A DNA stretch of 64,000 nucleotides from Leidyana gryllorum EB-2025a. Lineage: Eukaryota; Protista; Apicomplexa. The notes under the pieces were generated by a model, which saw only the letters and a program-made list of their open reading frames with translations, was not told the DNA's origin and searched no databases. The position numbers were made by a program, and so were the translations under genes. Positions 35,693 to 63,399 of this stretch are shown in pieces. Position 1 is the stretch's first letter. Every line of letters starts with the position of its first letter. Location of the stretch: contig JBLWGC010000140.1 in the NCBI GenBank assembly GCA_048772705.1, forward strand, positions 186,001 through 250,000. The letters are read 5' to 3'.

Positions 35693-36846
35693 TTATATAT
35701 GCAGTACTCCGAAAAACGCATGGAAACCACTGGCCACCATATTCCCATCCAATAGAAATGCCCGTCGCCAGAACGTTATCACATACGAAAAGACCGGAGT
35801 CTGCATCAACCGAAGGGGTCGTCCAGTTTTTGTACAATAAACAAGAGAGATAGAGAGAGACTCACCGTAGTCCCTATCACATAGATCAGACCGAAAGTCA
35901 CCAATGCCATCGTTCGCGGATTCCAACGACTCGCCCCCAACCATCGCTTCAGCCAACACGTGGGGGACAGATAGGGACTCACCACTCCCCAACCTGACGC
36001 GAGATTCAGTATAACGGGGAGGGGGCGGACTCACCGTCGAGTGGAGGTAAGGGCACCAGATTCAGCACACAGGCCATCCCCTGTAGCACAATTAAAACAC
36101 TCCAAGCTTTTCCGGTGCTGCCGCGTAGAGCCCAGTCACTCCGGGCAAAGAGCTTTGAAAAGAAGGCTGCGACGCAGACAGAGTATCAATTGGCACAGCC
36201 ACTTCAATTCAAAGCTCACTGAGACTGGCGAGGAGCACTCGGAGAGCGATGGCGAAAAGCAGATTGTTGAGAGGGCCCGCGATGGCCGTCATAGCTTCCC
36301 ATTGCCGGGACCTCAGATTTCCGGTTTGTACCAAAACAGAACCACCCGGGAGGGCAATACCGCCGAGGATAAGGAGTAATACGGGTAATATCAGCGACAT
36401 GACGGGATCCATATACAGAAGAAAGTTCAAAGTGAGGTACCCGCGAGCCAGAACCGATTGGTCACCTCCCCAATAAGCGCTGAGAGCGTGACCGTATTCA
36501 TGAAACGTTAAAGACAGAATCCATCCGGCCACCACAATTAGCCACAGCAACAGCTGAGAAGCAACAAGTCGATGGGTCCGTCAGCCAGCGGAACTTACAG
36601 CTGACCCAAAGTATACCCCGACAATCGACCACACGCCGAACAGTGACACTAAGAGTATGAAGGCCAGACTAACAGCCTTTTGTTTCGATCGACTCTCGAC
36701 ATTTTGAAGCTCCAAGTCTACGCTGGGCTGCCTCCACAGCATCTTTTGGATCAGTGCCCATTTTTTGTCCACGCCCACACAGATCGATACACAATCATCA
36801 CAACTCACCCGCCGGGAGGGGGGGGTTCAACTCCCCTCTGAGACAT
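35693..36846 (-). CDS. Site-2 protease / peptidase M50 family membrane metalloprotease, multi-exon
   Basis: TFHEYGHA (HExxH), AGPLNN, and NLVPLPPLDG in a downstream exon; several TM segments. Start approximate. Confidence 0.88.
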
Positions 36847-37040
36847 AACGGCCCAAAAAATCGATCACAACTGATACTGTCAGCAGAAAGTCAGCATCAA
36901 TTTTTTGTCTTCATCCTTCTCACTCATCGAGCCTTTCACTAACCGAGCAGTTGATTGGCCACTCCCCCATTCCCGCGATTGGGCTTTGGCACCTTCGCCC
37001 CGCCCCGCCCCCTCCCCTCCCTCACAGCGCATTGCTTCGC

Positions 37041-37141
37041 ATGATGACAACCTATGCACGCGGAGTCTCGTCTAATGGTAAAGTTCGTGTGAACCGAGCC
37101 ATTGGATAGGACGGTGACTGGCGAAGGATTATGAGATCTGA
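37041..37141 (+). ncRNA. Box C/D snoRNA, SNORD97-like guide for Cm34 of elongator tRNA-Met(CAU)
   Basis: C box ATGATGA 37041, D box CTGA 37138. Guide GGATTATGAGA pairs with UCUCAUAAUCC and the D+5 rule lands on C34. Internal hairpin tctaatgg/ccattgga. Confidence 0.8.
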
Positions 37142-37159
37142 GACAATTTGTGTGTGACT

Positions 37160-37293
37160 GAGGCTGCTGGCGTTCCATCACGTGGCTCTTCCAGCCCGCG
37201 TGGGGGGTCATAAAGCAGCCAGACCGACTCGTTGCCTGCTCGAGGTCTCTTCCCCACCAATGGAGGTCGACCTCTTCTAGGCTTCGGACATTC
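37160..37293 (+). ncRNA. Box H/ACA snoRNA, copy A (LSU UUAUGAC-U-G-AACGCC pocket)
   Basis: Two hairpins (ggctgct/agcagcc; gcct/aggc with gaggtc/gacctc), H-like AGACCG, ACA at 37288. Paralog at 38114. Confidence 0.75.
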
Positions 37294-37310
37294 CCTCCTG
37301 AATGCGTGTC

Positions 37311-37440
37311 TCTGCCAGCGTCGCTAATCTTCACTCGCTACAATGGGGTGAAGATTGGTACGCTTGGCGACATTGATTGGTTGCCTCTTCCATGCGCTGA
37401 CCGCCCCGTCCGGCGCCAGGGCCCACCGGTTACCTACATC
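37311..37440 (+). ncRNA. Candidate H/ACA-like two-hairpin RNA
   Basis: Near-perfect hairpin gccagcgt-gctaatcttcactc/gggtgaagattggt-acgcttggc, a second hairpin with gcgctg/cggcgc, ending ACAtcc. H box non-canonical. Confidence 0.4.
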
Positions 37441-37452
37441 CTGCGTGCAAAT

Positions 37453-37517
37453 ATGATGACAACACATCCGCCTTGCTGAGGCTCCGGCCTTTGAGGGTAC
37501 TGTTGTAATGAGACTGA
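37453..37517 (+). ncRNA. Box C/D snoRNA, SNORD57/snR51-like guide for SSU Am99/Am100
   Basis: C box 37453, D' CTGA 37476, D CTGA 37514. Guide ACTGTTGTAATGAG pairs with SSU CUCAUUA(C)AACAGU, and D+5 is the A of CUCA. Confidence 0.75.
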
Positions 37518-37538
37518 TCAATATTCCACGAATCCTGT

Positions 37539-37588
37539 GTGATAATCAATGGATCCCAGTGCCCTTCACTGTTCACCACCTTCTCTGA
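37539..37588 (+). ncRNA. Candidate minimal C/D guide RNA
   Basis: Degenerate C box GTGATAA, D box CTGA 37585. GTTCACCACCTT is complementary to LSU-like AAG(G/A)UGGUGAAC. Only 50 nt long. Confidence 0.3.
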
Positions 37589-37620
37589 CCCCGCCACCCG
37601 ACCCAATCCTCGTCCCACAA

Positions 37621-37690
37621 ATGATGATTCCAAGTTGCCGCCCCAGTCTGACATTTCTCTGACTGAAAAGGCAAATGCAGTAATTTCTGA
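37621..37690 (+). ncRNA. Box C/D snoRNA SNORD31/snR67-like, copy 1
   Basis: ATGATGA...CCGCCCCAGT-CTGA...TGACTGAAAAGG...TTTCTGA. Guide pairs with the LSU P-loop ACUGGGGCGG and D'+5 is the E. coli G2251 equivalent. Confidence 0.9.
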
Positions 37691-37720
37691 TCTCAACCTA
37701 TTGATTCCTCTCCCCAATTT

Positions 37721-37745
37721 CACACACACACACACACACACACAC
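37721..37745. repeat. (CA)n microsatellite between snoRNA copies 1 and 2
   Basis: Seen directly. Confidence 0.9.
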
Positions 37746-37775
37746 TCTATTTCTCTTCCCTTTTTCGGTATTCAG

Positions 37776-37845
37776 ATGATGATTACAAGTTGCCGCCCCA
37801 GTCTGACATTTCTCTGACTGAAAAGGCAAAAGCAGTAATTTCTGA
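37776..37845 (+). ncRNA. Box C/D snoRNA SNORD31/snR67-like, copy 2
   Basis: 70-nt near-identical copy with intact boxes and guide. Confidence 0.9.
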
Positions 37846-37895
37846 TCGAATTTTGTCTCCACTTCCCGTTTCAGATTGTGTCCACTGTCCCACAA

Positions 37896-37965
37896 ATGAT
37901 GATTACAAGTTGCCGCCCCAGTCTGACATCTCTCTGACTGAAAAGGCAAATGCAGTAATTTCTGA
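37896..37965 (+). ncRNA. Box C/D snoRNA SNORD31/snR67-like, copy 3
   Basis: 70-nt near-identical copy with intact boxes and guide. Confidence 0.9.
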
Positions 37966-38011
37966 TCCAACTTGTGTGTCTGTTCTGTCTTGATGTGAGG
38001 TGGTGTCTCGA

Positions 38012-38081
38012 GTGATGATTCCAAGTTGCCGCCCCAGTCTGACATCTCTCTGACTGAAAAGGCAAAAGCAGTAATTTCTGA
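38012..38081 (+). ncRNA. Box C/D snoRNA SNORD31/snR67-like, copy 4
   Basis: 70-nt near-identical copy with a GTGATGA C box. Confidence 0.9.
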
Positions 38082-38113
38082 CTTGACGACGACCATCGAA
38101 GCATAATTTGTGG

Positions 38114-38250
38114 GAGGCTACCGGCGTTCGCTGCATTGGCTCTCTTCAGCCCAATGTAACGGTCATGAGGTAGCCAGATCAAAGTGTTCCCTGCTCGAGG
38201 CGCTTCTCCTTTACCTATGAGACGAAGCCTCTTCTGGGACTCATACATCC
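38114..38250 (+). ncRNA. Box H/ACA snoRNA, copy B
   Basis: Stem ggctacc/ggtagcc, canonical H box AGATCA 38176, second hairpin, ACA at 38245. Pockets match copy A. Confidence 0.8.
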
Positions 38251-38271
38251 GTCCATCCCTTCGGAATAAGT

Positions 38272-38410
38272 GGCTGTCTTCTGAAACAAGTCCTCGCGAA
38301 ACCGACAGCGAGCGTCTTGATGTCCCGACAGCAAAACCAAATCTCGTGCTGTGGTCGCTCAATGGTCTCTTCGTTCTTACAGAGTTGGCCGCCGTCTACA
38401 ACCCACAACC
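38272..38410 (+). ncRNA. Candidate box H/ACA snoRNA (target not identified)
   Basis: Stem gctgtc/gacagc with an internal loop, H box AAACCA 38334, second hairpin tgtgg/ctaca, ACA at 38405. Confidence 0.55.
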
Positions 38411-39407
38411 CTTTACAGAATCCAAACACTGCATACAGCAGCGAGCAAAGCCGCAAACTCTTTCGAAAACCTAAAGAAGACAGTTTAGCGTCACGAATCA
38501 CAGAGAGACACGCCACAAATATGTTCAGTGCTGCCTACAATTGTGATCATGTTGACAGAGTTAACAGATGCCTTTGCACCTCATGTCCCAAAAGACTTCA
38601 GAGTAACTACTTAATGAACGGTGCACCTAAGCAGGCAGTCATATGTCTCGTCGGGTAGTGCCGGTCGTAAGCAGCGTGCAACAATAAGAACGGCGACAAC
38701 TGCTGGATTGTCGCCACCGGCCAGGACCGGTCCGGCGGGTGTCTGTGTCTCCGGGGCCGGCCGGCCCGGAGACGGAGACACAGACTAACACAGAGGAACA
38801 CAGAAGCTTAGAATCCGAGGCACTCAAAAAACCACTTTTTTACACGAACCCAGATAGATCATACTCCAAAAACATCCAAACCGGACCCAATTCCCGGAGT
38901 GGACCTAGATCGGGCCCGGTCGGTCCCCCCAGGGCTGGCCGGGACTACAAAACAGAGACATTGTCGGCAACCGGCCAGGTCGAGAGATTAGGGAGACGCC
39001 GTCTCCTTGCGCACATTACGGTACCACAGTGCTGCAAATGATGCATAGAGATACCACAATCCCCAACACCTCATCAATCTCGAAGTGGAGGCAGCAGGAA
39101 TAGGGAGGTGACTTGAGCAACGCCCACCAAACGGTGATGTCTGGAGGCCGTAAGTCGAATAAAAGAAAACTCGTCGCAACCGAACGACGGGACACTTGGG
39201 AAGTGTACGTGGTCACTCGATGTGCCCAGCTGCCCTTTCCGACGAAGCCGGGTGCCCCGTGTGCTTCCTAATTGAGCCTCGTCGACTGCTGAAACTCTTT
39301 GTCGTCTCCAGATGAATAGAGACGAAACGACCTCAAGTGTTGACTTGGCGGCCAGCAGGCCTGGGTACTTTACAGAGGCGAAGGGAATCAATGAACGGAT
39401 GAGCGAT

Positions 39408-39614: not shown

Positions 39615-40739
39615 ATGAGCAAACTGGTGCCGACAATCCGGCGGAGTGTTTCCACCAATGGAACACACAGTCACACCACCCACGGGTGGTCTTTGTGGTT
39701 AGAGGCCTCGCTTGCAGGGTGGTGCTGTTCGACAGACACTACTTCAGTAGAGGACATTGCCACGGTACCTTCATTCTTACCACAGGAGGTGGACCTGAAC
39801 GCGGAGCCCCCGGCATTTTGGCGTCTGCCAGGTCTGCCGCAGACGCAACCTTTGGATCCGAAGTTTGCATTTCTGTGTCACAGAGTGGGCCCACGCTGGC
39901 ATGAGACTCCAATGATGACGTATCTGTGGTCTCATCGCGAGAGCCCGAACGACGGATGGATTACAGTCTTACCTCGGGCTGGGAGACAGTACTTCCACGT
40001 GTACGCCGGACCCGACAGCTTCCGCGAGGACGGAGAGACTGGGGCAGTGATACCAAGTCTGGGCTTTCAGTCCGTTTGCACTTGGGCAGCAGTGACCTGT
40101 GAGAAATCAGGACAGATTTTAGAGGTATCCACAAGGGGGGGGCCCATTACGAAAAAAGCCGTTCGAAAGCAACGGTTAATGAATTGGGCTGTTCTCCGTG
40201 ACCCTTCGACCGTCGTGGAGACAGCTGCAGCACCGGTGACCGATCAGGGGTGCATCGCTTTGACCGCGATGGCGGACGAGGAGCGGAAAAAGTACTCTCG
40301 AAGGTTGTTGAGCCTCGAGGTCGATGCAATACACGCCAAGTCAGCCGTGAATGTGCCCGTCAAAGACTGGAGGTGCAGTCCCAAGACTGTGCAGCTACTC
40401 TATCTGCAGCGAGGGTCTTCAACAAGGTTTGCGGGGCAGTTCTTCAAGGCGTTGGAAGCCTTTGCCGGCAGCTTCATGGGAGGCTGGGTGTCCATCGAGT
40501 GCATTGACGGCGAGGGCTACCGATACGACTTTAAATGGGGAGACGCCGATCAAGTAGTACATGCGCATAGACGCGTGGTGGTCACTGGTGAAGGCTGGGA
40601 GGGAAAAGATGTGCCGCAGCCCGACGAGAAATCCTCCAAAAAGCGATCCTCCAGCAGCAGCAGGAAGCGGTCCCCCAGCAGCAGCAGGAAGCGGTCCCCC
40701 AGCAGCAGCAGAAAGCGGTCCAGCAGCAGACACCGCTGA
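39615..40739 (+). CDS. Orphan family member 1 with C-terminal SSSRKRSP repeats
   Basis: 374-aa ORF that shares motifs with the next two ORFs; 24-nt repeats at 40640-40730. Confidence 0.7.
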   Translation: MSKLVPTIRRSVSTNGTHSHTTHGWSLWLEASLAGWCCSTDTTSVEDIATVPSFLPQEVDLNAEPPAFWRLPGLPQTQPLDPKFAFLCHRVGPRWHETPMMTYLWSHRESPNDGWITVLPRAGRQYFHVYAGPDSFREDGETGAVIPSLGFQSVCTWAAVTCEKSGQILEVSTRGGPITKKAVRKQRLMNWAVLRDPSTVVETAAAPVTDQGCIALTAMADEERKKYSRRLLSLEVDAIHAKSAVNVPVKDWRCSPKTVQLLYLQRGSSTRFAGQFFKALEAFAGSFMGGWVSIECIDGEGYRYDFKWGDADQVVHAHRRVVVTGEGWEGKDVPQPDEKSSKKRSSSSSRKRSPSSSRKRSPSSSRKRSSSRHR

Positions 40740-40830
40740 TCACAATTTTTCAGCTGAACATTTATTCGTGGATCATTATTTGCCTCTGCCGCCGGTTCAC
40801 CACCAACACTGTATGCACTTTCCCTATTAG

Positions 40831-41922
40831 ATGGCTCCTTTAACACGCATCAACCAGAAAGTGGATCACACCAGCGTCGACCGGCTGTCGGCCTCCTGTT
40901 TGCTCCAGATGGTGGGAGATGTAGTATGGACCACGACAACAGGTTCCGGGGCGATGGAGACACCAACTTCCAGTGTCGTCGTTGAGGGAGAAGGCTCTCA
41001 TTTCCAATCAATGGCCGCTGATGTCCACGTGGCCCGGCCAAAGTCACCCGCTCCCAAACCGAACCCCAAAATGGTAACTACACCAGTGTCGGTCGATCAG
41101 GATGAGTGGTTGTTCCGATCAAACTGGACCGAGAGGAGCTGCGAAAGATTGGTCGGCCAACTCCTGTGGCACGCGGAGTCCGAGTTTATTAAACACTGCG
41201 ACGTGATATACACTTGGAACGGTCGCCGATATCCGGAGGGGGGCCAAGTGACCGCTCGTCTGCCAAACAACACTACCCTCAAATTCCATGGCGGCGACAA
41301 CTTTTCCAGGGATGGCTCGCCAAACCCCTTATTGGAGCGACTCATGGAATGGGCAACTCATTGCAACCTGCCCGAAGATGCGGTTCTCATCATTAACAAT
41401 GACGAAAAAGTTGCAGTGATCTCGGGATGGGAAGGCACCCAATACAAAACCCTCTCCGTGAACATCACTGGCGACCACCTTGAGGATATTGACTGGAAGC
41501 CCCCTTCCAAAACACACACACACACACACACCGAGCACCAGCCCCGCTCGACCCCCGTTTCGCCGCTGACGTGGTGTTTCACACCCGCCGCGCTCAGAAA
41601 TCTGATGCGGGGAAGTCAAAAGTACAGTTTATTCGCTTCCAACTTCCTCAAGTCTCTGCAAGCGACCCTGTCGTATTCGGGTGGGAAGGTCACTGTGCGG
41701 GAAGTGGAGTCCGATGAGTGTGCGTTCGAAATTTATGAAGCCAACAACAATAAAGTGCATCGCATCTATGTACCCCAGAGAGAGCAATGGTCGGACATGG
41801 CAGCCCTGAGAACCCAGACACGAGAAGAATGCCTGAATTGGGAAGACCAGATCGCCACCACTGCAGAGGAAAGCACCACACTAACAACAACAACGAGCGC
41901 GCAGGTTCAGACATTACAGTAG
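40831..41922 (+). CDS. Orphan family member 2
   Basis: 363-aa ORF that aligns by eye with member 1 in two blocks. Confidence 0.7.
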   Translation: MAPLTRINQKVDHTSVDRLSASCLLQMVGDVVWTTTTGSGAMETPTSSVVVEGEGSHFQSMAADVHVARPKSPAPKPNPKMVTTPVSVDQDEWLFRSNWTERSCERLVGQLLWHAESEFIKHCDVIYTWNGRRYPEGGQVTARLPNNTTLKFHGGDNFSRDGSPNPLLERLMEWATHCNLPEDAVLIINNDEKVAVISGWEGTQYKTLSVNITGDHLEDIDWKPPSKTHTHTHTEHQPRSTPVSPLTWCFTPAALRNLMRGSQKYSLFASNFLKSLQATLSYSGGKVTVREVESDECAFEIYEANNNKVHRIYVPQREQWSDMAALRTQTREECLNWEDQIATTAEESTTLTTTTSAQVQTLQ

Positions 41923-41982
41923 TTAGTTACTTCAGGTAGGGCCTGACACCCACGGACGTTTTTGTGCTTTTTACTCCACTTA

Positions 41983-42954
41983 ATGACGCCTCTGCGATGC
42001 TCTCCAACCGCTGGCTCAAGTCCGTCTTCAAAGCTCCAATTCTGGTGGCTCCATCCCTTAGTGACTTCGGGGGTCACGTTGCTGCCAGAGGACATCGCCA
42101 ATAAGACTGAAAGTCGCTCGTTCTGTTGCTGCTGGAAGACTCGGAAGCTGCCGACTCGCACCCTGACGGCAGAGGCAGCAGCAACAGCATACACAATACT
42201 CGAGGCGCCAGGCGCGCCTGCGAGAAGAGAGATGCCCCTCACCATGAAGGCGCTCGTTGAGGGGGTGGTGTCGCATGGCTACCGGCTGCATTGGACGCCC
42301 GAGAACCCCTCGTGGTATCTGATTCGCTATCCTAACACTGGGCAGTGGCTGAGACTCGAGTCGGAAACACCAATGATGGGGGATAATTCGGAGTTTGATG
42401 AGGACTGGCTGTGTGCTCTGCGATGGGCGCCCCGAGCGGCAGAACGAAATGATTGGCATATGGGGAGGTGTGTATTGTGCCGAGACAAGGTGACTGGGGA
42501 CTTTGAGTTGCGGTACTATACAAGAAGCTTGAGTAGACTTTTGATAATTGACCGTCTCCCTCCAGATAGAGAGTTCTTCAATCTTCGGGGGAGCGTGAGA
42601 CAGCTGAAGGATTGGGGAAAGGCTCCGCAGCCGCCTGTGGAGAAGTGGGAATGGACGAGGGAAGCCCAAGCGGCTGTGAAGACACTGACTGATTCGGCTC
42701 TGGCGGATCTCAAGAGTCAACTGCTCGACATGCTGCCCAGGCTGGCGGGTACCAACAGTGTCAAAGTGTCGGTCAGCAACAAGATTTCATTCACCAAAAC
42801 GTTCGAGTTTCAACTGAGCAGTAACGAACTGCTCCGAATTTTGGTCAACGGCGCTCCAAGGTTCCCCGAATTCGTTGCTGATAGCAGTCGTCCTTTTAGT
42901 ACGCAAGCCTCTACCAGCTCTCCTCAGTGCAGCAAAGAGCTGCAAATTGATTAG
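41983..42954 (+). CDS. Orphan family member 3 (more diverged)
   Basis: ~320-aa ORF with a PV..W.WT block and C-terminal pattern like members 1 and 2. Start uncertain. Confidence 0.6.
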   Translation: MTPLRCSPTAGSSPSSKLQFWWLHPLVTSGVTLLPEDIANKTESRSFCCCWKTRKLPTRTLTAEAAATAYTILEAPGAPARREMPLTMKALVEGVVSHGYRLHWTPENPSWYLIRYPNTGQWLRLESETPMMGDNSEFDEDWLCALRWAPRAAERNDWHMGRCVLCRDKVTGDFELRYYTRSLSRLLIIDRLPPDREFFNLRGSVRQLKDWGKAPQPPVEKWEWTREAQAAVKTLTDSALADLKSQLLDMLPRLAGTNSVKVSVSNKISFTKTFEFQLSSNELLRILVNGAPRFPEFVADSSRPFSTQASTSSPQCSKELQID

Positions 42955-42977
42955 GGATTTTTGAAAACTGATCCCTC

Positions 42978-44705
42978 ATGACAGTCACCTGTATAACATA
43001 CAACAGAAGGACCGGCTGTACGTCGCCGTCATACGCCAGGAGCAGCAGAGAGACAGCATGGGTATCATTTGTAATGTCATTGACCCCTACCACCATCGAC
43101 AGTTGTGACCACGGAGAAGTATTAAGCGGCCCCCGCGTCCCCGTCCCCCTTCCGTTACCAAAGGGTCGACCCAATTCAGACCCCACTTCTTGGATCACAG
43201 GTCACCGGACGTCAGCCTATCAGTCTGTCGCTCGTGAGAAGGCTGCGTTGAAGAAGGTTCAAGCGATGCGTCAGGACATTGTTGCAGTACTCTTTAACAC
43301 ACTACTCATCAAACAAGCCGACGGGCCTCCGCCTCCCAAGGAATACACCCCCCGCGAGACTTTGTGCTTTTCCGATGAGGACATACCCTTTGCGGACGAC
43401 GACGGCGAGGACGACGAGACCCACCAAACTCTTTCTCCTCCTCTCGAGCCAAACTCAAAGTCAGACATAACGGAGTCTTTTGAGTCGATGTCACAGGATT
43501 TCTCCACTGATGTTGCGGTCACAAAATCCTCATCATCTTTATTCGACGCCAACCGGCTGTTCGTGTCACAAATGACTCAAGGGCGAGAAGAGACATGGCT
43601 CGAACCGCTTATCCAGAGAGATCGGTGGTACAACTTTGTCCGTCAAGAGTACTTTGTCACCAGTTTGACTATACCGCAGGTGACTGACCTGGATGAGGAT
43701 GACGGCGGAAGCAGCCTCCCCTGTACAGCCTTCCGCATCCTTCACCCCGAGACGCACCTGTGTACGCACCTCGTCTTCTTCTTCCCCCGAGGACGCGTCT
43801 GCATCTCCAAGCCTGATGCTACAAAGGCTGTTTGGATTGACTCCTCTCTGCCCGCCGGAGATCCCGTCGCAGACCTGTCCCTTCCTCAAGAGCCTCTCGA
43901 CCTCGCCGACCCCGTCCAAATAGTTGGTTTTGTTGATTACTTATGCAAAGTCTATTCCATCCCTTTGACACGCCACTCTTCTTCTCCGACGGCGGCTGAT
44001 TCTAAAGAAAACAAGAGAAACAGCTTCTGGTCCTTCCGATCCGGCGATCGGCTCAACGCCTTCGCGAACGCGGCAGCCAAAGTAGCTAGAAGTGCGACAT
44101 GGAGACTACGAGGAAAGGACCGTCCGTCTAGAGACATGCCCTTGAGGAAACTCTCTCAGTCTGCTCCTGCGCTCAACTCGGAACCATCCAACGCGACATC
44201 GAGGCGACGCCCTGACTCCACGCCACCGTGGACGAGATATAATGGGATGGAGGGTGTCGACTGTGGTGGGGCTGTGCCGAAAACGGACGCCAATGCCGAC
44301 GGTACCGCTAACAATACAAAGTCTTCACCGACCACTGGAGAGAGAAGAATGTCACTGAAGCGTGTTGTTTCCAAGGTACGCGGCCGAAGTGACCAGAAGG
44401 GGGGGTCCAAGTCGTCGGAGGGAATTTCGAGTTTAAACTGTTGGAGTTCAACGGGAACCAGCAGTCCGGCTCCCACCCGGGGGGGCGAAGGCGCCTACCA
44501 CTACGGCACATTGCCCGTCCCCCTTGTTCCAGAAGGTGTTGGAGTGACGACAGGTCAGAAACGTCCAGGTGGGAAGCCCAGGTCGATGACAAGTGGTGCA
44601 GTACCAACGGGGACTGCCCCTCGTTGTTCCCGCCCCTCGTCGACACTAAACCGATTGAGAGAGCGATTTGGGGCAGTGGGAAGGTTTGTGGCTGTGGCCG
44701 CCTAA
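42978..44705 (+). CDS. Hypothetical protein with Ser/Arg-rich disordered C-terminus
   Basis: 575-aa intronless ORF. Confidence 0.7.
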   Translation: MTVTCITYNRRTGCTSPSYARSSRETAWVSFVMSLTPTTIDSCDHGEVLSGPRVPVPLPLPKGRPNSDPTSWITGHRTSAYQSVAREKAALKKVQAMRQDIVAVLFNTLLIKQADGPPPPKEYTPRETLCFSDEDIPFADDDGEDDETHQTLSPPLEPNSKSDITESFESMSQDFSTDVAVTKSSSSLFDANRLFVSQMTQGREETWLEPLIQRDRWYNFVRQEYFVTSLTIPQVTDLDEDDGGSSLPCTAFRILHPETHLCTHLVFFFPRGRVCISKPDATKAVWIDSSLPAGDPVADLSLPQEPLDLADPVQIVGFVDYLCKVYSIPLTRHSSSPTAADSKENKRNSFWSFRSGDRLNAFANAAAKVARSATWRLRGKDRPSRDMPLRKLSQSAPALNSEPSNATSRRRPDSTPPWTRYNGMEGVDCGGAVPKTDANADGTANNTKSSPTTGERRMSLKRVVSKVRGRSDQKGGSKSSEGISSLNCWSSTGTSSPAPTRGGEGAYHYGTLPVPLVPEGVGVTTGQKRPGGKPRSMTSGAVPTGTAPRCSRPSSTLNRLRERFGAVGRFVAVAA

Positions 44706-45001
44706 TGAGAAAACATTTTCTCAGGAATTAAACATCACAGGTTTCATACTTTATTCAATCTATTCTTTTGAGCCCGAGGGACTCAATGAGTCACAGCTTC
44801 GTTCCGGCCAACTGATTGATCGATGGGCTGCACCACCCGACAGCCTTTCATCTCGTATACTGCCTCCCTGGAGGTCTATCACTTTTGATGATTTATTTCC
44901 GTACTTTGTGCCAAACTTGCTATTGACTGAGTGAGCACCTATGTGACTGCTGGACCAATTCGACGGTCGGCCTCGGACTTTGCGCTGGGCGAGGCGATCG
45001 G

Positions 45002-48000
45002 ATGAACTCAATTGCGGCTCCGCTGGGGAGAAGCAATTTTTTTTTTCAGCGATTGAGAACCCCGGGAATGGGTCCATCAGTGCGAAGTAGGAATGGTCGG
45101 GAGGTATACAGTGTTCACAAGCGGTTAATCCAATGTATTGAGTTCTTGAGTCTGATGCAAGACACAACTCTCGCTGCTGGAGTCGTCGAGGGACCACAGC
45201 AACGACTATCTCGATGCTATCAAGAGCTCTCAAGAACTGATCGCCAATGGAAGTTGTACGATCGAATGACACTGCGTCGAGCTCTGAGGGCAATGTTGGA
45301 AGCAGAGCTTCGTCATGAGGCGGCCTCGCGGCCTCTCCAGACGACAACTGATTTTGACACCCTGGATACCGCCATCACTGACTTGGACTCTGCCACACAC
45401 TCCCAATCACCCACCTCATCCACTCAAGGAGGATATTGTCCGGCTGAGGAGGCCCACGAAGCTTTGGTTGAAACTATGGCGACGTATTTGGAGCATATTC
45501 TACCCGACCGTTGTGCACGTCTGCGAGCGGGTGGCGACTCGCTCAAGTCCAAGTTGTGGAGAGCAGATGTGGAGAGACTGGTAGAACGCCTGGTGGACAG
45601 ATCAATACCCCGCGGAACGAAACGAGAGAAGAAAAAGTATTCAGCTCGAGCGAAATGTGAAGCCATAATTCGACAGCTCAGCCTCTGGCTGAACCACGAG
45701 AGTGATGGAGACAATCGTCATTCTTCTAATTCGCCTTCAGCATCGACATCGTGCCTACAACTTATCTCCGCCGATGTTCAACCTTTCATTTGTCCCAAGT
45801 GGGAGTGCCCCACCAAGACTTTCACTTTGAATCGATCCGAAGTGTCTGAGGGTTGGACGCTGGGTGATTTGTATCGGCCAGGGGCCGTTCACGTCCCCAT
45901 TGACTTCTGCGATTCATTTGTCATTCCAAGTGGAGAGGTCAGTAGAGATCATTTGGATTTTCCTTTAGAACTCACGGAGCTTTTGGAGAGAGTACTGGAC
46001 CTTATTTACAAGTCACCTCCCGACACGTACCACAAAGTCAGAGTGTCGATGGTCGAAACCGAGGGTGGACCGATATTCTTCCGAGCCGTTCTGATGGCAG
46101 CGACACCCGTCTTCCTCACATCTCCAGTTCTGGGATGGTTTCGTCCGACTTCATCATCTCGCACACTCGACCTCTGGGCGACACCAGATCACGCTGGTGC
46201 CCGAGATCGGAAACCTCGCACCACTCAAATTACCGCCGTCAGAGGGAATCAGTACATTGGCTACAAATTCAGACCGGGCGATGCTGATGGTAAAGGAGTC
46301 ATCGCCACGCCCAATAGGGTCGTCGGTATCCAGATCGATACCAAATCGGTTGAAGATCCCACGATCTATGGTCTCGAGAAACTGCATCTGAAGGTCATTT
46401 ACCGTTTAATGGATGATTACGACGTCACTCCCTTTACCCACAGTCTCTATGTAACAGCCGATCGTGTGGAACTGCGCAAACTCCCCGCCGAAGACAACTC
46501 GTCATCATACGGCCACCAAGTCATCGCCAACGTCCACATACCTTCGGGTGAGAAGATGCTCACTTGCAGTCCCTTCTGCTTCCTGACGGTCAAAAATAGA
46601 GGCAGTGCAGAGTGGAATAAGGCTATGAGGACGGCTCAGTCGATTGACTATGACATCTCGAAGCTCCACACAGTGTGCCATGACGACTATCTCCGACATC
46701 TCTGCTTCCAACAAGTCAATCCTCATGTACGACGGGAACGCGATAATCACATCATAGGAGCCACAATATTTGCATTTCAAAACCGCATTCGCCGCGATGA
46801 AGCGCGAAATCTCATTTTATCCGATATCCCCTTAACCGAAATCGGCGATATTACCCCAACTCGCCGAGACACCCCAATTCAACAACAAGACGCCCCTGTT
46901 GCTGACGACTCTATACCACCGCCCCCGCCGCCGCCACCGTTTCAATTACCGCCTGGTAACCCTCCATTGGACGAGACAGTGCAGCGAAACAGTTTGGCGT
47001 TGTTGACGGAACTCCGAAATAACGCTCAATTCAAGCGACGATCACACACAGACTCCACCACTCCCCGTCAGAGCCCTCGCGATGACCTCCCGCCGCCGAC
47101 GCATTCAACTCGCCACTCCAGCATTGATTTGAATGGGCTTCGAGACTCAACCCCCTCCGCTCGGATAGGGGGTGGTATACCGGAGACGGAGACAGCGAAT
47201 GGAGGACATCAGTCCGGGCCCTTCCACAGCAACGCCCACAGGATCTCAAGTCTGCACGAAATAGAGTCGAGACAGACCGATATGTCTCGAGGGGCGGACG
47301 ATATTGTGTGGGAACGGATGCCGTGTGTCCTCTCCCATGATGAGCATCACCACCACCACCATCGAGGGTGGGAGCCTACAGCTGAAGCGATACAGCCCGC
47401 CAGCAAATATCCCGCCCCCGTCAACGGATACCCCCACTCTTATTTAAGTGGGGCAGACAGTGTACGACCGGACCTCTCCTACGACCAGCAGTCTCAGATG
47501 GCGGCTGTGGAACATCGCAATGGAGACTATGTTGAATACGAGACTCCGAGCCGAGCAGATTTATGGTTCCTCCAGAAAGGAACACGCGACACGACCGACA
47601 GCCCCAATACCCCCATCCACAGGCAACAGTGTTATGAACACGGACTCATTCTTCCCGAAGACATGGAGCAGCGGTGCTCGATGAGTGCAGTGCCACACGA
47701 CGCATTCCCTTTCCACCACGCGCGCAGAGAGGTACACGGACCACCCGTTCCCGGACATCAAGCGCGCTTTGTTTCCGAGGAGGAAGACGTTCCGGGATCA
47801 CTTCAATCTCACCACGATGCGAACGGCAGAGGAGCTGCACTAAACGCCAGGGGACTTCCCATCAGTCCCCCCTACGACGATTATCGGGTCTGGAGACCAT
47901 CGGCTGCGAACGCTGAAGCCGTTCACAACAGTGATATAGCCAACTCGTCTTTCCACCCGGGTCCGAACGAGTGCGGACTACCGACTGTTGACCTTCGCCG

Positions 48001-51000
48001 TGAGAGTGGGGAACAATATGGGGGCGAATACGTCTCGGATGGATTGCATTGGGCACCCTTCGTGCCGAGAGGCCGTTTGGCCGATTGGGCATCGCAGGGA
48101 GACCCAAGTCTTCAAGGCCAACAGCATCAAGTTTTCGCTGCTGCAGAGGGAAGAGGCAGATTTGAGGTTGACGGCGAACTCTCACCCGACTTTACAGCTC
48201 CTTTTCCTCAGGACCTTCACGAATTGCCCGATTTTATCCACCTGGACACTATCAAATACGAGAACGAATTACTCCCCGCATCCGGAGCCAAAGGTGGGCC
48301 AGTGTCCAGCCGCAGAAGTTCTGGGGCCACATATTACTCTGCCGTGGACAACTACGATGGGGAAGCCGATGTGACAACAGGACTTGACAACCCCGACGGC
48401 TTGATCGGTATACGATCGGCCGCGCTCTCCTACGCCGCAGAGGTTGGGCAGCAATGGTCAGAGTTTGACGGTGATTGTGATGCAGAGGTGGAACACTTCA
48501 CGAGCCGATCCCCGTCAAGAAGAAGTCCCGGCCAAAGCCAAACTCCGATGAACGACTTTGAGCGCAGTACCCAAACCCCGCACTATCAAGAAGGAATGGA
48601 TCGTGAGGGATTCGTGCCAATTAAGAAGGCTGAGCCGACGACGATCCTCAATCAGCAACGATTCGGGCCCCATGGGGCGGATAACGGTGCAACAGGTATT
48701 GCGGGAACGCAGTTTGCCAATGTTGTACCGGAAGTGTCAGCCCTGAGCTCCAGTGAACCTTTCACAACGCTACCCGGAATTGCTCACTATTCTGCTGCTA
48801 AGGGCAATTTTGATTATCGCACGCCATCACACTTTGAGCGTAAGCGACCGCAGCGGACGACAGAGTCTTTGGGAGCAGAAATGCGCACAGCTGAACCCTC
48901 CAGAAGACCCGTTGACGCTGCTGCCGTTGGCCCGCGGTCACCCGTTGGCCAGAGTCCAAAGGGCGATGCCGCCGCTCAAAAGCCTAACGCACTGTTCGCC
49001 TCCCCAGTCACTGGACTGCTCTCAACAGAGCTGCCGCTGCCAACGATGACATTCACACCTCCCGTTGATAACACCGAAATGAGATCGGCATTTCTGACTT
49101 CACTTTTCGCACCTGAGAGTGAAGAGAGAATGTCTCAGTCACCATTCGTTGTTGGCACGTCTGATCACTCGCTTGAAAGGAACGTATCGCCGTCTCCATT
49201 CCGCGAAGAGAATACTCCACAGCAGTCGCCCGCCCCCATTGTGGGATCGACAGCAGAGGACGGTCGTCATTTTGTCACCCCGAGGTCGACACCAACGAAG
49301 AAAGCATCCGTTGAGGGAGGCTCTCAGGACAGCACTGCTGGCAGCCCGAGTGGGCTCGCCCTCATCGCGGGTGAGGGCTCTGTCACAATCAGTCCCAGCC
49401 GTGGCGGTGAGCGACAGTCCCCGTCTCGGGGTGGAAACGACTTTCTGGGGACTCCTCCGGTCAGCAGCACACCCAGAATTGTAGGGATGCGAGCCAAGTC
49501 ATCACTCGTCCCGACCGTCGGCGTCTCTTCAAAACCAGAGTCTCCCAAGTCCCCTCAACTCTCGTCAACAACAGCAGACCTGCTGGCATTCGCACAGAGC
49601 ACATTTGAGCCCACCTCTATCGATCCGGCGTCGAGTGTTCCTACGGCGACCCTCGCCGTCTCCGACGACGACTTCATTCTCACCGCAGACGCTACTCATC
49701 CACCAATCCCTTTCAGAAGAGCTTCTGCAGTCGTCATCACTCGGAGCGACGCAGAAGGAACAGTCACCCCCATCAACCTCCAGCCGCTCTCGCCTTCGGA
49801 ACTCCAATCTCCGGTGATTGATCCGCCCAGCGAGGTCGGCTCGACACCATTGGAAGCTGAGGTTCTGGAAGACGAAAAATCAGTCACCATCAATGCCACT
49901 GGGCGCCCGCGGAGCTCACCGTCACCTGCAGAACAACAGCAGCGCGTTGGGACGGCACCCCCTCTACCGGGCAGTGACAACGTCGACGGCACACCCAGCG
50001 CCACTTCGACGACATTCGTGCTCCACTCGCCCATTTCTGCAGTGATGAAGGGGACAGAACCTCAAGTCGCAGGGCCAACTCTCCTTCACCAAATTCATAA
50101 CGCATCTTTGGAGCAAAGGACAACACCAACTCTGGAGACTCGCTCCACCACGCCAGTCGACGTTCAGGAAAACAGTCCAGAAGATGAGGCGCTGATCGCA
50201 GACGCAGTGGTGCAGACGGTGGAGCCGGGAACTCGCGAGAGCTCCTCGGAGTATCACGAGGCCCTCTCGTTGTGTCAGGAAGGGGTTCGAGAGATGGAGC
50301 AGCAGCCACAGACAAATGTCGAGTCAATAGAAGAGGAGCACAATGAGAGGATGGGAGACGGAGACGGAGATGTTTTTCTAAATGAGCCCATCCGGTCAAG
50401 TTCCTTTGACCCCAACTTGTTACGGGCGCCGGGGCTGAACCGCGTTGACAGTACACCTGAAAGGTCGTCATGGCCTCGAGTGCGAGGCGTCGGGCAACGG
50501 CTAAAAGCAAAGATTCTGCAACCGCTGTCTCGTGCGACCGAAGCGGTGAAGAATTCCATCGCGTCGAGTCTGCCAACGACTCAGAACGCTGGTGGTATTC
50601 AGCTCTCAGGCGCGACAGCTATCCGAGATGATACCTCGCGGACAGCAGAGACTCCCGTCGTGGTTGAGTCTCCGGAACGAGTGGTCACAGTGAGCACGAG
50701 AGATGACTCGGTGAGCCGGTCGTCGAGGACGGAACCAACAGTGTCGTGGGAGGGTCCAGCGCGGCTGTTGTCCAAGTTGAAGGGACGACAGCAACTTGAA
50801 ATAACTCCCGCACTGAGTCAGGAAGTCAAACGAATTGTCGGAAAGTACAAATGGGCTAAACAGGCGACAGAGGATTTGGACAGACTCCCTTTGAGTCTGA
50901 CAGATAAGATCAGAGTCGCAGAGATATTGGGTGGAGAGAAGGCCGCCTGGGATGCGTTGAAGCGGGCTGATGAGGCCTATGTACGTCTTGAAGGGTCCAA

Positions 51001-60781: not shown

Positions 60782-63399
60782 CTACTGAGGAGCGGCAGTA
60801 CTTGTGGAGGGGGCGGCGGTTGCATAGCACATCGAGGGCATCCCCCAACCGCCGTACGAGCTCGGAACAGAATAGTAGGCACCATAGTGTGGGTCCACAA
60901 CGCACACCGGAGCGGGCTGGCCCGGATGCCAGTACATCGGGATACCCGCTACGTAACTGCCAGATCCGAGAGCAGTCTCTTCCTCCTCAATCTTCTCCAA
61001 CTCGTCTTCCGGCACTCCAACTCCAGTCACCAAACAGACCACTGAAGGGGCAGGAGCTGGAGTCGCTGGCACATAGTAGCAACCCATCATGGGGTTCACC
61101 ATCAGTTGGACTGGATGCAACATATCCGGGAGCGGCTCTCGACGTCTCGGGTTCGAACTTCCGCGGGGAGACACGCTGCTTCCCATTGGATTTGCACTCA
61201 GAGCCTCGCCCATTGTCTCACGAGTGAGCTCGGAACGAGCAGAACGCGGCGAGCTCTGCGCCGTCAAGGCCTCATAGTGCTGGGGAGCAGCAGTCGACTC
61301 TTCAGCGCGTGGTGTCGAGGGCTTTGTTTGCTGCTCGTTATCAGAAGGCGGAGAAGAACTGTTCACCGCTTGCGATGGTAACTGTTCACAGAGCTTCGCA
61401 TTGATCCGTGCCGCCTCCTGGGCACAATCCTCAATCATCCGCTCCTTCTCCTCCGCAGACAAACTGAACACTTTACCCTTCGAATACAATGAGCTGACCG
61501 ATCTCGCAGCGGCTGAAGAGCCAAACACGCTCTCAATAGTCGCTGATCCTCCGGGACTGCGACGCCCGTTGCTGCCGCGACCACCACATCGACTCTTCCT
61601 GTTACACGAGTGGTTCGCCAGTCTTTCACCATTCCGACTCAACGATTCCCGATTCGGCACAAACGAAACCATCAAATTGGCTGGGCGCTCCTCGGAGGTG
61701 ATGGATAGAATGTCTTCCTTCACATCGCCCGGAGTGATCGCGGACTGAATTGTCCGGCGCCACAACTGAATGTCGTTCCCACGCCGCACATCACGAATGT
61801 GAAGTGAAACAAGATTCTGAAGAAACAGAAAGATGTGATAGAGATCAGAGGCAGTATCATCGAGGCACGCAAGCGAGCACACGGGAACACTGAGAGGGGG
61901 ATATATGTGGCGTAAAATCAGTAGTTTCACACCGACTACGGAGAGAGACGGCACTTTGCGATCGGCACTCGACTGCGGAGACGGAGACGGCGCAAACACG
62001 CACACGCTTGTCGACCCCAAAGACTGCGCGAAAGTCCCGACTGACAGTCGATCCGCCATGCCTGCAGTGTTCGAGTCCTCCCCAAGTAGTTGATTGAAAC
62101 TCGCTCTCCCACCCCATGTGCCACCATGTAGGTACAGACAGAATGCGCACAAGACACAAGTACGTGGACCGTCATCCATCTCCCAGCATAAGCAGAATGT
62201 ACAACTCACATAGTTCTTCCAGTCTCGGAAGAGTCCAGAGAAGAAACCCAAAGCCGTCTTGGTGAATATTGCCTGAAAGTGTATGTTGATTGGTGAGATT
62301 GCAAGTCGCGACTTACCTCGGTATCATCGCGCGCGAAATTCTTGACGAGAAATCTGCCACCCGTTTCGTTGGCGCTATCCTCCCAAATGGGTCTGATGCC
62401 TTCTCGGCAGAAAGCTATAACCGAATTTGGGGGAAGAGTGTTCCAGTCGAGCATTCGATGGAACTCAAAGAATTCGGAGACACGGGTGAAAATCCCGATT
62501 TTATGCATGCCTCCTTCGTATACTTCTTTATTGATCCCCTTCCGGGCTCCGCCCGATGGGAGTGTATACCAAATCTCAAACCGTTCGTGGAAGATTACGT
62601 CGCCATCTTCCTCGGTCATGTGACCCTCGAGGGGTCGCGCAGTCTCCGATATTTGGGACGCGCATTCAGTGTCGCTCGGGGGCTCAGATACAGCATCTAT
62701 CGAGGATGTTGTTGTTGGAGGGGGTGGATTGGTGGAGTAGGCGGCGGATTCGGGTTCAGAAGTAGGAGTTTCGGGTTCGGGTTCGGCAGGCCAGCCTCGC
62801 ATTCGACCTTCAAAGGTGGCTGGGGAACGGCTACGACTATCATCGGTCGCCTTGGTGTGTTTGTGGAAGGGCGGATCAGCGGGTTCAGGGGGATGTATCG
62901 TTGCCGCAGTCGGCGGCTCCGAGGGAAGGCTGATGGTGGGGGCTGATGAATTTTGGGATGTGGGAGTGGAGTCTTCAGGGGCAGAATCGTTTGAGCAGGT
63001 GGAAGGATCCTCTTCGATAATGGAAGACGAGGGAATGGAAGTGGAGGACTCAGTAGAGGAGAGGGGAGCTGCTGCCTCCTTCTGCTGCTGCTGTTGAGCA
63101 GTAGCCAGAGAGGAGGTCTGTCTAGGCCAGTCAAGCAATACCTCGAGGGAGGATATGCCAGCGAATCGTCGTTTTCTCGGGGCGTCCGGGTTGTTAGCAG
63201 GAGTGGCTGGTGGTTTCGACGACGGCGGCGGAGTGGCCATAGAGGCCGCGGCGTGTCCACGAGACGCGCCTCCTCGGTAGGATGAACTTGCGTTCATACG
63301 GCGGTTACCACCCGCTCCGCGTCTACCATGATGTCTTGAGGAAGCTGGAGATTGTCTGTCGTTGGAATATGCGTCCATAGCAGCAGCCGTCGCGCGCAT
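60782..63399 (-). CDS. Atypical eIF4E-family cap-binding protein with long N- and C-terminal extensions
   Basis: FEIWYT, FTRVSEFF, REGIRPIWEDSANETGGRF, DIQLWR. Introns near 62317-62274 and 62209-61817. Confidence 0.88.

What the first reader, a model, noticed from the sequence alone, without database searches (positions are those of the whole stretch)
37041..38410. Hidden mixed C/D + H/ACA snoRNA cluster (~10 RNAs in 1.4 kb) in an apparent ORF desert
Seen: same-strand back-to-back units with C (RTGATGA) and D (CTGA) boxes, or hairpin-H-hairpin-ACA architecture. They lie divergent from the M50 gene and downstream of a GC-box-like tract at ~36997-37020, with no host gene exons visible. Known: polycistronic snoRNA clusters occur in plants, yeast and trypanosomes. 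Inference: an independently transcribed polycistron guiding SSU, LSU and tRNA modification in an alveolate, invisible to protein-centred annotation.
Basis: partly seen in the sequence, partly recalled or inferred. Interest (0 to 1): 0.8.

Follow-up and report, generated by a model that had tools for sequence, protein, structure and literature searches.

The report
Unannotated mixed snoRNA gene cluster
This gene-free-looking 1.4 kb stretch is a real, tightly packed cluster of at least eight small nucleolar RNA genes that guide chemical modification of the organism's own ribosomal RNA and methionine tRNA; it is a useful annotation but an ordinary kind of locus.

Summary
On the + strand of 37041-38403, eight units are well supported.

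- **Six box C/D RNAs.**
  - Four tandem copies are of the U31/SNORD31/snR67 type. They aim at the LSU P-loop G2492, the E. coli G2251 site.
  - One has a perfect 14-bp guide to SSU A100, the site served by snR51 in yeast and SNORD57 in human.
  - One has a 12 Watson-Crick + 1 G·U guide that places C34 of the genome's own elongator tRNA-Met for methylation, as SNORD97 does.
- **Two paralogous H/ACA RNAs.** All 36 predicted pairs are kept, 12 through compensatory changes, and the pocket strands are identical in both.
- **A third H/ACA-like unit** (38272-38403) is only plausible.
- **Two claimed units are not supported:** 37539-37588 and 37306-37441. The latter is mostly a 28-bp hairpin without a pocket.

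A scan of both strands of the whole window for C box + CTGA + a guide of at least 10 bp found hits only at the six C/D units.

Rfam gives no hit at gathering score, only sub-threshold U31 matches. No RNA run was listed, so expression and the single-precursor idea remain inferred. That inference rests on 12-85 nt spacers and the absence of splice donors.

Other first-stage notes record similar snoRNA arrays elsewhere in this genome. This is a new member of a known kind, of modest interest.

The parts
36209..36761 (-). 5' part of the divergent M50-like metalloprotease gene. The ATG is at 36761-36759 and the HEYGH exon is at 36209-36550.
   Evidence: Three-frame translation. Pfam Peptidase_M50 E 1.6e-5, 24.8 bits, below the 27.2 cut-off for this single exon. 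Exons were searched singly by reference and never joined.
36996..37023 (.). GC/C-rich tract 18 nt upstream of the first C box. Its role is unknown.
   Evidence: Located. No k-mer of 10 or more is shared with the upstream regions of two other snoRNA arrays.
37041..37141 (+). C/D snoRNA CD1 (101 nt). C box 37041-47, D box 37138-41, and a long internal hairpin. The D guide is aimed at C34 of elongator tRNA-Met(CAT).
   Evidence: 12 Watson-Crick + 1 G·U contiguous pairs to L012:3979-4052. The 5th guide nucleotide faces C34. No Rfam family at E<=10.
37162..37293 (+). H/ACA snoRNA A. Lower stem 37162-68 with 37214-20. Pocket strands 37169-74 and 37207-13. H-like box AGACCG at 37221-26. ACA at 37288-90.
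   Evidence: Fold. Paralog covariation. Ranked 1st in the architecture scan. Coordinates.
37306..37441 (+). Unclassified. A 28-bp near-perfect hairpin (37306-37373) is followed by a weak hairpin and ACATCC. It is not a canonical H/ACA guide.
   Evidence: Hairpin z -5.9. + strand -36.8 versus - strand -25.0 kcal/mol, with 4 G·U pairs. It has no internal pocket, and its H-like box ACATTG lacks the final A. No significant target.
37453..37517 (+). C/D snoRNA CD2 (65 nt). C box 37453-59, D' 37476-79, D 37514-17. The D guide aims at SSU A100. The D' guide tentatively aims at LSU G1789.
   Evidence: The D guide makes 14 perfect pairs with SSU 97-110, scoring 28 against a maximum of 25.5 in 30 shuffles. 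The D' guide makes 10 WC + 1 G·U and equals the best shuffle.
37539..37588 (+). Claimed C/D unit; not supported.
   Evidence: C box GTGATAA, 50 nt long, no fold signal (z -0.17). Best rRNA duplexes have mismatches and G·U pairs within the shuffle range. It matches only a weak, chance-level Rfam snoR41 hit (17.5 bits, E 3.5).
37621..37690 (+). U31/SNORD31/snR67-type C/D snoRNA, copy 1. D' guide to LSU G2492.
   Evidence: Rfam SNORD31 33.6 bits (GA 40), E 4.4e-5. 11 WC + 1 G·U to LSU 2488-2499.
37776..37845 (+). U31-type C/D snoRNA, copy 2.
   Evidence: Rfam snR67 34.5 bits (GA 55), E 1.5e-4. Same guide and target.
37896..37965 (+). U31-type C/D snoRNA, copy 3.
   Evidence: Rfam SNORD31 34.0 bits, E 3.4e-5. 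Same guide and target.
38012..38081 (+). U31-type C/D snoRNA, copy 4 (C box GTGATGA).
   Evidence: Rfam SNORD31 33.8 bits, E 3.8e-5. Same guide and target.
38116..38250 (+). H/ACA snoRNA B, paralog of A. Lower stem 38116-22 with 38169-75. Pocket strands 38123-28 and 38162-68. H box AGATCA at 38176-81. ACA at 38245-47.
38272..38403 (+). Possible third H/ACA snoRNA. Hairpin 1 has a 7-bp lower stem, a 9/8-nt internal loop and an AAACCA hinge. Hairpin 2 is poorly formed. ACA at 38398-400.
   Evidence: Fold z -0.16. It did not pass the architecture scan. Its best target, next to the LSU sarcin-ricin loop, would need a hairpin with no lower stem and is reached by 7% of shuffles.

Best explanation
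Positions 37041-38403 (+ strand) hold a cluster of at least eight snoRNA genes. It sits 279 nt from, and divergent to, an M50-like protease gene.

**C/D RNAs (inferred to assemble with fibrillarin-type snoRNP proteins and direct 2'-O-methylation)**
- CD1 targets C34 of elongator tRNA-Met.
- CD2 targets SSU A100 and possibly LSU G1789.
- Four near-identical U31-type copies target the LSU P-loop G2492.

**H/ACA RNAs (inferred pseudouridylation guides)**
- Two diverged paralogs have kept identical pocket strands in their first hairpin.
- Their best common target is LSU U2983, but this is only weakly supported.

**Transcription**
- The units are 12-85 nt apart and no splice donor lies between them.
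- The most likely mode is therefore one + strand precursor started in the 279-nt divergent region and trimmed to the protein-protected mature ends.

Shown here: the boxes, the architecture, the paralog covariation and the pairing to the genome's own targets. Inferred: expression, the modifications themselves, and the single precursor.
For: - **C-box enrichment and strand bias**.
- **Specificity control.** The window-wide scan has hits only at the six C/D units.
- **U31 copies.** They give sub-threshold Rfam SNORD31/snR67 matches over the full model length. They are invariant in boxes and D' guide while the flanks diverge.
- **P-loop target.** The own LSU reads GGCTGGGGCGGCAC at 2486-2499 and pairs 11 WC + 1 G·U with the guide.
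- **CD2.** The D guide is a perfect 14-mer to SSU 97-110. It places A100 in the GGCUCA*UUA context, although the downstream target sequence differs from yeast as I recall it.
- **CD1.** The guide pairs with the elongator tRNA-Met found next to the rDNA and places C34. The same target is published for SNORD97/SCARNA97 in vertebrates, with candidate homologs in insects, plants and tunicates (PMC6601510).
- **H/ACA pair.** All 36 pairs are kept in both copies. 12 changed on both sides, against 0-3 in slid controls. The pocket strands GGCGTT and GTCAT are identical, and the pocket-to-H-box distance is 14 nt.
- **No splice donors.** There is no GTRAGT donor on the + strand from 36700 to 39149, whereas this genome's introns use GTRAGT...CAG.
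- **No significant coding signal.** Overlapping ORFs have only one very weak Pfam hit (RseC_MucC, 13.5 bits, E 0.069).
- **Genome context.** Other tandem snoRNA arrays lie on the same contig.
Against: - No Rfam family reaches its gathering score.
- No RNA-seq run was listed, so no transcript, mature end or modification has been observed.
- No related genome with synteny could be found, so conservation rests on within-locus paralogs only.
- H/ACA target predictions are not better than shuffles. The U2983 site is 5+6 bp and is not, to my memory, a known pseudouridine in yeast or human.
- H/ACA copy A has G rather than A at the last H-box position.
- Most C/D units lack a clear terminal stem.
- Antisense 11-12-mers to rRNA or tRNA occur about 1.3 per kb per strand across the window, so pairing alone is weak without the box context.
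Confidence: 0.8

Rival explanations
1. The snoRNAs are real but are not an independent transcription unit. They would be carried in the leader, or in a non-canonical intron, of a longer + strand transcript. That transcript would continue into the downstream same-strand ORFs from 39615 onward, or be a non-coding host gene.
For: - Five + strand ORFs follow at 39615-52339 with gaps of only 23-296 bp.
- A GTAAGT donor lies at 39150, between the cluster and the first ORF.
- Another first-stage note in this genome describes a snoRNA cluster running into an RPL4 gene (I did not check it).
Against: - No canonical donor lies within or between the units, so a one-snoRNA-per-intron layout is excluded.
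- About 1.2 kb, including a GC-rich palindrome at 38739-38785, separates the cluster from the next ORF.
- There are no transcript data either way.
Confidence: 0.15
2. Only some of the units work. Several U31 copies, H/ACA copy A, or both, would be decaying duplicates or pseudogenes. The array would then be a by-product of unequal recombination rather than a selected increase in dosage.
For: - The three variable positions in the U31 copies occur in all four combinations, suggesting ongoing recombination.
- One of them lies in the D guide, which has no convincing target.
- H/ACA copy A has a degenerate H box, AGACCG.
Against: - All four U31 copies keep intact C, D' and D boxes and an identical D' guide, while their flanks are unrelated.
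- Both H/ACA copies keep every predicted pair through 12 compensatory changes and have identical pocket strands. That pattern argues for selection on both.
Confidence: 0.1
3. The region is a non-functional repeat or minisatellite with chance box-like motifs.
For: - No Rfam gathering-score hit.
- A (CA)n microsatellite lies inside one spacer.
Against: - The box enrichment, the strand bias and the scan control, whose hits fall only here.
- The guides hit three independently known modification sites in the genome's own RNAs.
- The compensatory changes in the H/ACA pair.
Confidence: 0.02

Closest known systems
SNORD31 (U31) / yeast snR67, Rfam RF00089 and RF01177, clan CL00053
   Same: - Same box order and the same D' antisense core (CCGCCCCAG followed by CUGA).
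- Same target, the second G of the LSU P-loop GGGG (E. coli G2251).
- Full-length alignment to both Rfam models.
   Different: - Scores of 33.6-34.5 bits are below the gathering scores of 40 and 55.
- It is present as four tandem copies.
- The D guide does not match the snR67 second target region and has no convincing target here.
Yeast snR51 / human SNORD57 (18S Am100 / Am99)
   Same: The D guide places the homologous A in the conserved GGCUCA*UUA context of the SSU for methylation (site equivalence from my own knowledge of the yeast 18S sequence).
   Different: - No detectable sequence homology to any Rfam family.
- The guide is adapted to this organism's diverged downstream sequence.
- The D' guide points to a different LSU site than I recall for snR51.
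SNORD97 / SCARNA97 (2'-O-methylation of C34 of elongator tRNA-Met(CAT))
   Same: A D-box guide pairs across the anticodon loop and places wobble C34 at the 5th position. That target is published for vertebrates, with candidate homologs in insects, flowering plants and tunicates, and as an archaeal C/D sRNP function (PMC6601510).
   Different: - No sequence homology was shown (no Rfam hit).
- It is 101 nt long with an internal hairpin.
- It sits in a cluster rather than in an intron.
- The lineage is a protist.
Polycistronic snoRNA clusters of plants, yeast (e.g. snR72-78), trypanosomatids and Euglena
   Same: - Several different C/D and H/ACA genes lie on one strand with spacers of tens of nucleotides.
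- Some genes are tandemly reiterated.
- No promoter-sized gaps separate the units.
   Different: - No precursor was observed here.
- No recognisable RNase III (AGNN-loop) processing hairpins were identified.
- The cluster is head-to-head with a protein gene.

Membership tests
Box C/D snoRNA | 5' C box RUGAUGA and 3' D box CUGA, 60-150 nt apart | tested here: met
   Six units have exact boxes, 65-101 nt apart. The seventh claimed unit (37539-88) fails.
Box C/D snoRNA | An antisense element of at least 10 nt ending next to D or D', with the target nucleotide opposite the 5th position | tested here: met
   SSU A100 (14 bp), LSU G2492 (11+1 bp) and tRNA-Met C34 (12+1 bp). The scan control has no hits elsewhere in the window.
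Box C/D snoRNA | Terminal stem or k-turn closing the C and D boxes | tested here: inconclusive
   By eye, only short or offset complementarity flanks the boxes.
Box C/D snoRNA | A stable small RNA bound by fibrillarin, Nop56, Nop58 and Snu13 | not testable with these tools
   No RNA run was listed.
SNORD31 / snR67 (Rfam CL00053) | Score at or above the Rfam gathering threshold | tested here: not met
   33.6-34.5 bits against thresholds of 40 (RF00089) and 55 (RF01177). E-values 3e-5 to 1.5e-4.
SNORD31 / snR67 (Rfam CL00053) | D' guide to the LSU P-loop G (E. coli G2251 equivalent) | tested here: met
SNORD97 / SCARNA97 | D guide pairing with the elongator tRNA-Met anticodon loop and selecting C34 | tested here: met
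   using the tRNA found. The initiator tRNA-Met pairs over only 10 nt.
SNORD97 / SCARNA97 | Sequence homology outside the guide | tested here: not met
   No Rfam family matches 37041-37141 at E<=10. I did not confirm that Rfam holds a SNORD97 model.
Box H/ACA snoRNA | Hairpin, H box (ANANNA), hairpin, then ACA 3 nt from the 3' end | tested here: met
   Unit B meets it fully (AGATCA; ACA+3). Unit A meets it with AGACCG (last position G).. The 37306-37441 unit fails. The 38272-38403 unit is inconclusive.
Box H/ACA snoRNA | An internal pocket 14-16 nt from the box whose two strands pair around a target U | tested here: inconclusive
   Hairpin 1 of A and B has conserved strands 14 nt from the H box. 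These pair 5+6 bp around LSU U2983. Exactly this pattern occurred once in 2000 shuffles, but the score lies within the shuffle range once the pocket boundaries are left free.
Box H/ACA snoRNA | Structure supported by covariation | tested here: met
   12 of 36 pairs changed on both sides and 100% of cells are paired. Slid controls give 0-3. Caveat: there are only two sequences, and the structure was derived from them.
Polycistronic snoRNA cluster | Several snoRNA genes on one strand, too close together for separate promoters | tested here: met
   Gaps of 12-85 nt.
Polycistronic snoRNA cluster | A single precursor transcript processed into the individual RNAs | not testable with these tools
   No RNA run was listed.

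The most novel reading that the evidence does not exclude
The strand-specific, near-perfect 28-bp hairpin at 37306-37373 sits between snoRNAs and lacks any guide pocket. It could be a built-in RNase III or Dicer-type element. That is, it could be either the cleavage signal that opens the polycistronic precursor or a miRNA-like small-RNA precursor riding on the snoRNA transcript. Neither has been described for this lineage.
Probability: 0.1. Interest if true: 0.55.

Novelty: new member of a known kind. Interest (0 to 1): 0.33.

Why it matters
- **Annotation.** It adds eight snoRNA genes, with specific and testable targets, to a small apicomplexan-like genome. Few snoRNAs are annotated in its better-studied relatives. 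For example, C. parvum had 3 benchmark snoRNAs plus 7 new ones in PMC9465071.
- **tRNA-Met guide.** If confirmed, it would extend C/D-guided methylation of the tRNA-Met wobble cytidine to a protist. That activity is known from archaea and vertebrates and is predicted in insects and plants. A protist example would support an ancient origin.
- **Genome-wide trait.** Tandem amplification of snoRNA genes appears to be common in this genome. That may interest those studying rRNA modification dosage in reduced genomes.
- **What does not change.** None of this alters how snoRNAs are understood to work.

Tried and rejected
- **Rfam families on the whole genome.** Searches with RF02543 and RF01960 on the own genome failed four times. 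I located the rDNA with a DNA pattern instead.
- **P-loop pattern.** The human-type U version found only chance hits, because this LSU has C at that position. A fifth genomic match to the U31 target complement (L005) is in coding-like sequence and is a chance match.
- **Expression.** No RNA run was listed, so read laying was never used.
- **Relatives.**
  - A CK2-alpha neighbour led to one Logan contig (L016, 87% protein identity). It shares only the kinase gene and has no cluster.
  - The plant contig L017 is irrelevant.
  - The M50 exon found a single 534-nt contig.
  - The 411-aa neighbour is not on record.
  - The one metagenome scan with the U31 guide returned unrelated eukaryotes. L018 and L019 are true U31-like RNAs and L018 holds three copies. 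L020 is a chance match in coding-like DNA.
- **Paralogs.** No copy of any unit lies elsewhere in the genome.
- **Promoter.** No motif is shared with two other arrays. The bacterial promoter and terminator scan is uninformative for a eukaryote.
- **H/ACA targets.** Free and constrained searches gave scores within the shuffle range. The sarcin-ricin-loop target for 38272-38403 would need a hairpin with no lower stem, so I rejected it.
- **Second guides.**
  - The U31 D guide pairs at best 10 WC + 1 G·U with SSU U598, in two copies only. That is not a site I know to be modified.
  - CD1 has no D' box or second target.
- **Processing hairpins.** Hairpins like 37306-37373 were not found in two other arrays.
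- **M50 gene.** It was examined exon by exon by reference. I made no joined model.
Full report
**What is in the sequence**

The stretch 37041-38403 has no ORF with a significant Pfam match; the only hit is a 13.5-bit RseC_MucC match at E 0.069. It does carry six exact RTGATGA heptamers on the + strand and none on the - strand. About 0.39 were expected from the rest of the window (P about 4e-6).

A repeat search finds four 81-nt direct repeats that are 89-98% identical (37612-38083). It also finds a diverged pair at 37206 and 38161. Aligning the four repeats shows that only 3 positions vary from the C box to the D box. The flanks are unrelated, so the conserved unit coincides with a C/D RNA.

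**Getting the organism's own targets**

The window is G000:C140:186001-250000 of a 15.5 Mb assembly. Rfam-family searches on the genome failed. I therefore located the rDNA with an SSU 3'-end pattern, fetched it and delimited the genes with Rfam:
- LSU at L012:5309-8537 (-)
- 5.8S at L012:8669-8821 (-)
- SSU at L014:457-2234 (+)
- 5S at L014:5623-5742 (+), with a second copy at L012:4912-5031 (+)

ARAGORN found 21 tRNA genes beside the LSU. They include an elongator-type and an initiator-type tRNA-Met.

**C/D units**

- **U31 copies (37621-90, 37776-845, 37896-965, 38012-81).**
  - They align over the full length of Rfam SNORD31 and snR67 at 33.6-34.5 bits (E 3e-5 to 1.5e-4). That is below the gathering scores of 40 and 55.
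  - Their D' guide pairs 11 WC + 1 G·U with LSU 2488-2499. This places G2492, the second G of the P-loop GGGG (E. coli G2251 by my knowledge), at the 5th position.
- **CD2 (37453-37517).**
  - It has a perfect 14-bp D guide to SSU 97-110, placing A100 in GGCUCA*UUA. By my knowledge of yeast 18S this is the snR51/SNORD57 site.
  - Its D' guide pairs 10 WC + 1 G·U with LSU 1785-1795 (G1789). That only equals the best of 30 shuffles, so it is tentative.
- **CD1 (37041-37141).**
  - It has one guide, upstream of the D box. This pairs 12 WC + 1 G·U with the elongator tRNA-Met and places wobble C34.
  - The initiator tRNA-Met pairs over only 10 nt.
  - This is the published target of SNORD97/SCARNA97. 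Candidate homologs are reported in insects, flowering plants and tunicates, and the archaeal counterpart is a C/D sRNP (PMC6601510).

**Control for chance**

Antisense 11-12-mers to these RNAs occur about 1.3 per kb per strand across the window, so pairing alone means little. I therefore scanned both strands of the whole window for three things together:
- RTGATGA
- CTGA within 150 nt
- a gap-free duplex of at least 10 Watson-Crick pairs ending 0-1 nt from the box

Every hit falls at the six C boxes above. None falls at the other 38 RTGATGA sites.

**H/ACA units**

- **The two paralogs.** Units 37162-37293 and 38116-38250 fold as hairpin, hinge, hairpin, ACA+3. They are about 80% identical.
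- **Covariation.**
  - RNAalifold predicts 36 pairs, all kept in both copies, 12 of them through changes on both sides.
  - Slid controls give 0-3 such pairs and 33-46% pairing.
  - The caveat is that there are only two sequences and the structure was derived from them.
- **Pocket.** The first-hairpin pocket strands (GGCGTT and GTCAT) are identical in both copies. They lie 14 nt from the H box.
- **Target.**
  - The pocket strands can pair 5+6 bp around LSU U2983.
  - Exactly that pattern occurred once in 2000 shuffles.
  - With the boundaries left free, the score is within the shuffle range.
  - I know of no pseudouridine at the homologous site in yeast or human. The target is therefore unresolved.
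- **Second hairpin.** Its internal loop is only about 3+3 nt, and neighbouring positions covary with each other. It is probably structural rather than a guide.
- **Background rate.** A crude architecture scan of both strands of the window found 29 candidates. Unit A ranks 1st, 37313-37438 ranks 3rd and unit B ranks 14th.

**Units that do not hold**

- **37539-37588.** It has GTGATAA for a C box, is 50 nt long, shows no fold signal and has no convincing target.
- **37306-37373.** It is a 28-bp near-perfect hairpin (z -5.9).
  - It is more stable on the + strand (-36.8 against -25.0 kcal/mol) and has 4 G·U pairs.
  - It has no pocket.
  - The following hairpin and ACATCC do not give a canonical H/ACA.
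- **38272-38403.**
  - Its first hairpin is well formed, with a 9/8-nt loop and an AAACCA hinge.
  - Its second hairpin is poor (z -0.16 overall).
  - It failed the architecture scan.

**Setting and transcription**

- **Upstream side.**
  - The M50-like gene starts at 36761 on the - strand. I searched its exons singly by reference and made no joined model.
  - The C-rich tract at 36996-37023 is real. It is not shared with the upstream regions of two other snoRNA arrays on the same contig.
- **Splicing.** This genome's introns are GTRAGT...CAG. No such donor occurs on the + strand from 36700 to 39149, so the units are not one per intron.
- **Spacing.** Gaps between units are 12-85 nt, too short for separate promoters. 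A single precursor is therefore the best reading, but it is an inference.
- **Missing data.** No RNA run was listed.
- **Open alternative.** A longer transcript running into the closely spaced + strand ORFs from 39615 cannot be excluded.

**Lineage and relatives**

- **Lineage.**
  - At least four AP2 domains above the Pfam cut-off fit a myzozoan or apicomplexan. Another agent's note says the same.
  - My CK2-alpha search gave no clear taxonomic signal.
- **Relatives.**
  - No relative with synteny could be found.
  - No copy of any unit exists elsewhere in the genome.
  - The metagenome scan did show U31-type RNAs with the same guide in unrelated eukaryotes, one of them with three copies.

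**Verdict**

This is a genuine, unannotated mixed snoRNA cluster of at least eight genes. Its predicted targets lie in the organism's own SSU rRNA, LSU rRNA and elongator tRNA-Met.

It belongs to a well-known kind of locus, seen in plants, yeast, trypanosomatids and other protists. First-stage notes record similar arrays elsewhere in this genome. Interest is modest. The tRNA-Met guide and the odd long hairpin are the two points worth a bench test.

Noticed in passing
L012:1-5031 (G000:C157): 21 tRNA genes are packed into about 4.8 kb directly beside a 5S gene and the LSU rRNA gene. The ITS1 is very short, about 70 nt.
   Followed up: partly
L014:457-5209 (G000:C73): Two SSU-5.8S-LSU 5' fragments face each other as an inverted pair about 1.2 kb apart, with a 5S gene nearby. 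This is either a palindromic rDNA end or an assembly fold-back.
   Followed up: no
window 38739-38785: A GC-rich near-perfect DNA palindrome lies about 340 nt downstream of the cluster. The surrounding 141 nt fold with z -3.0. It might mark the end of the transcription unit or be a repeat remnant.
   Followed up: partly
window 38931-39068 (+) and 60888-61056 (-): Two further hairpin-H-hairpin-ACA candidates came from my crude architecture scan (H boxes AGATTA and AGACTG). The first lies just downstream of the cluster and folds with z -2.4.
   Followed up: partly
L021:2138-2985 (- strand; ends 19 nt before the window) and L022:1248-1650: Two more tandem triplicated C/D-type arrays lie on the same contig. 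One gives a weak Rfam snR60/Z15 hit (31.1 bits). Tandem amplification of snoRNA genes seems to be a trait of the whole genome.
   Followed up: partly
window 39615-52339 (+): Five long same-strand ORFs are separated by only 23-296 bp. The two I scanned have no Pfam match.
   Followed up: no
window 37721-37746: A (CA)13 microsatellite lies inside the spacer between U31 copies 1 and 2. The spacers are otherwise unrelated to one another.
   Followed up: no
L018:3618-4793 (metagenome contig Ga0126336_10001063): An unrelated, AT-richer eukaryote carries three U31-type copies within 1.2 kb. They have the same P-loop guide and canonical C' boxes.
   Followed up: partly
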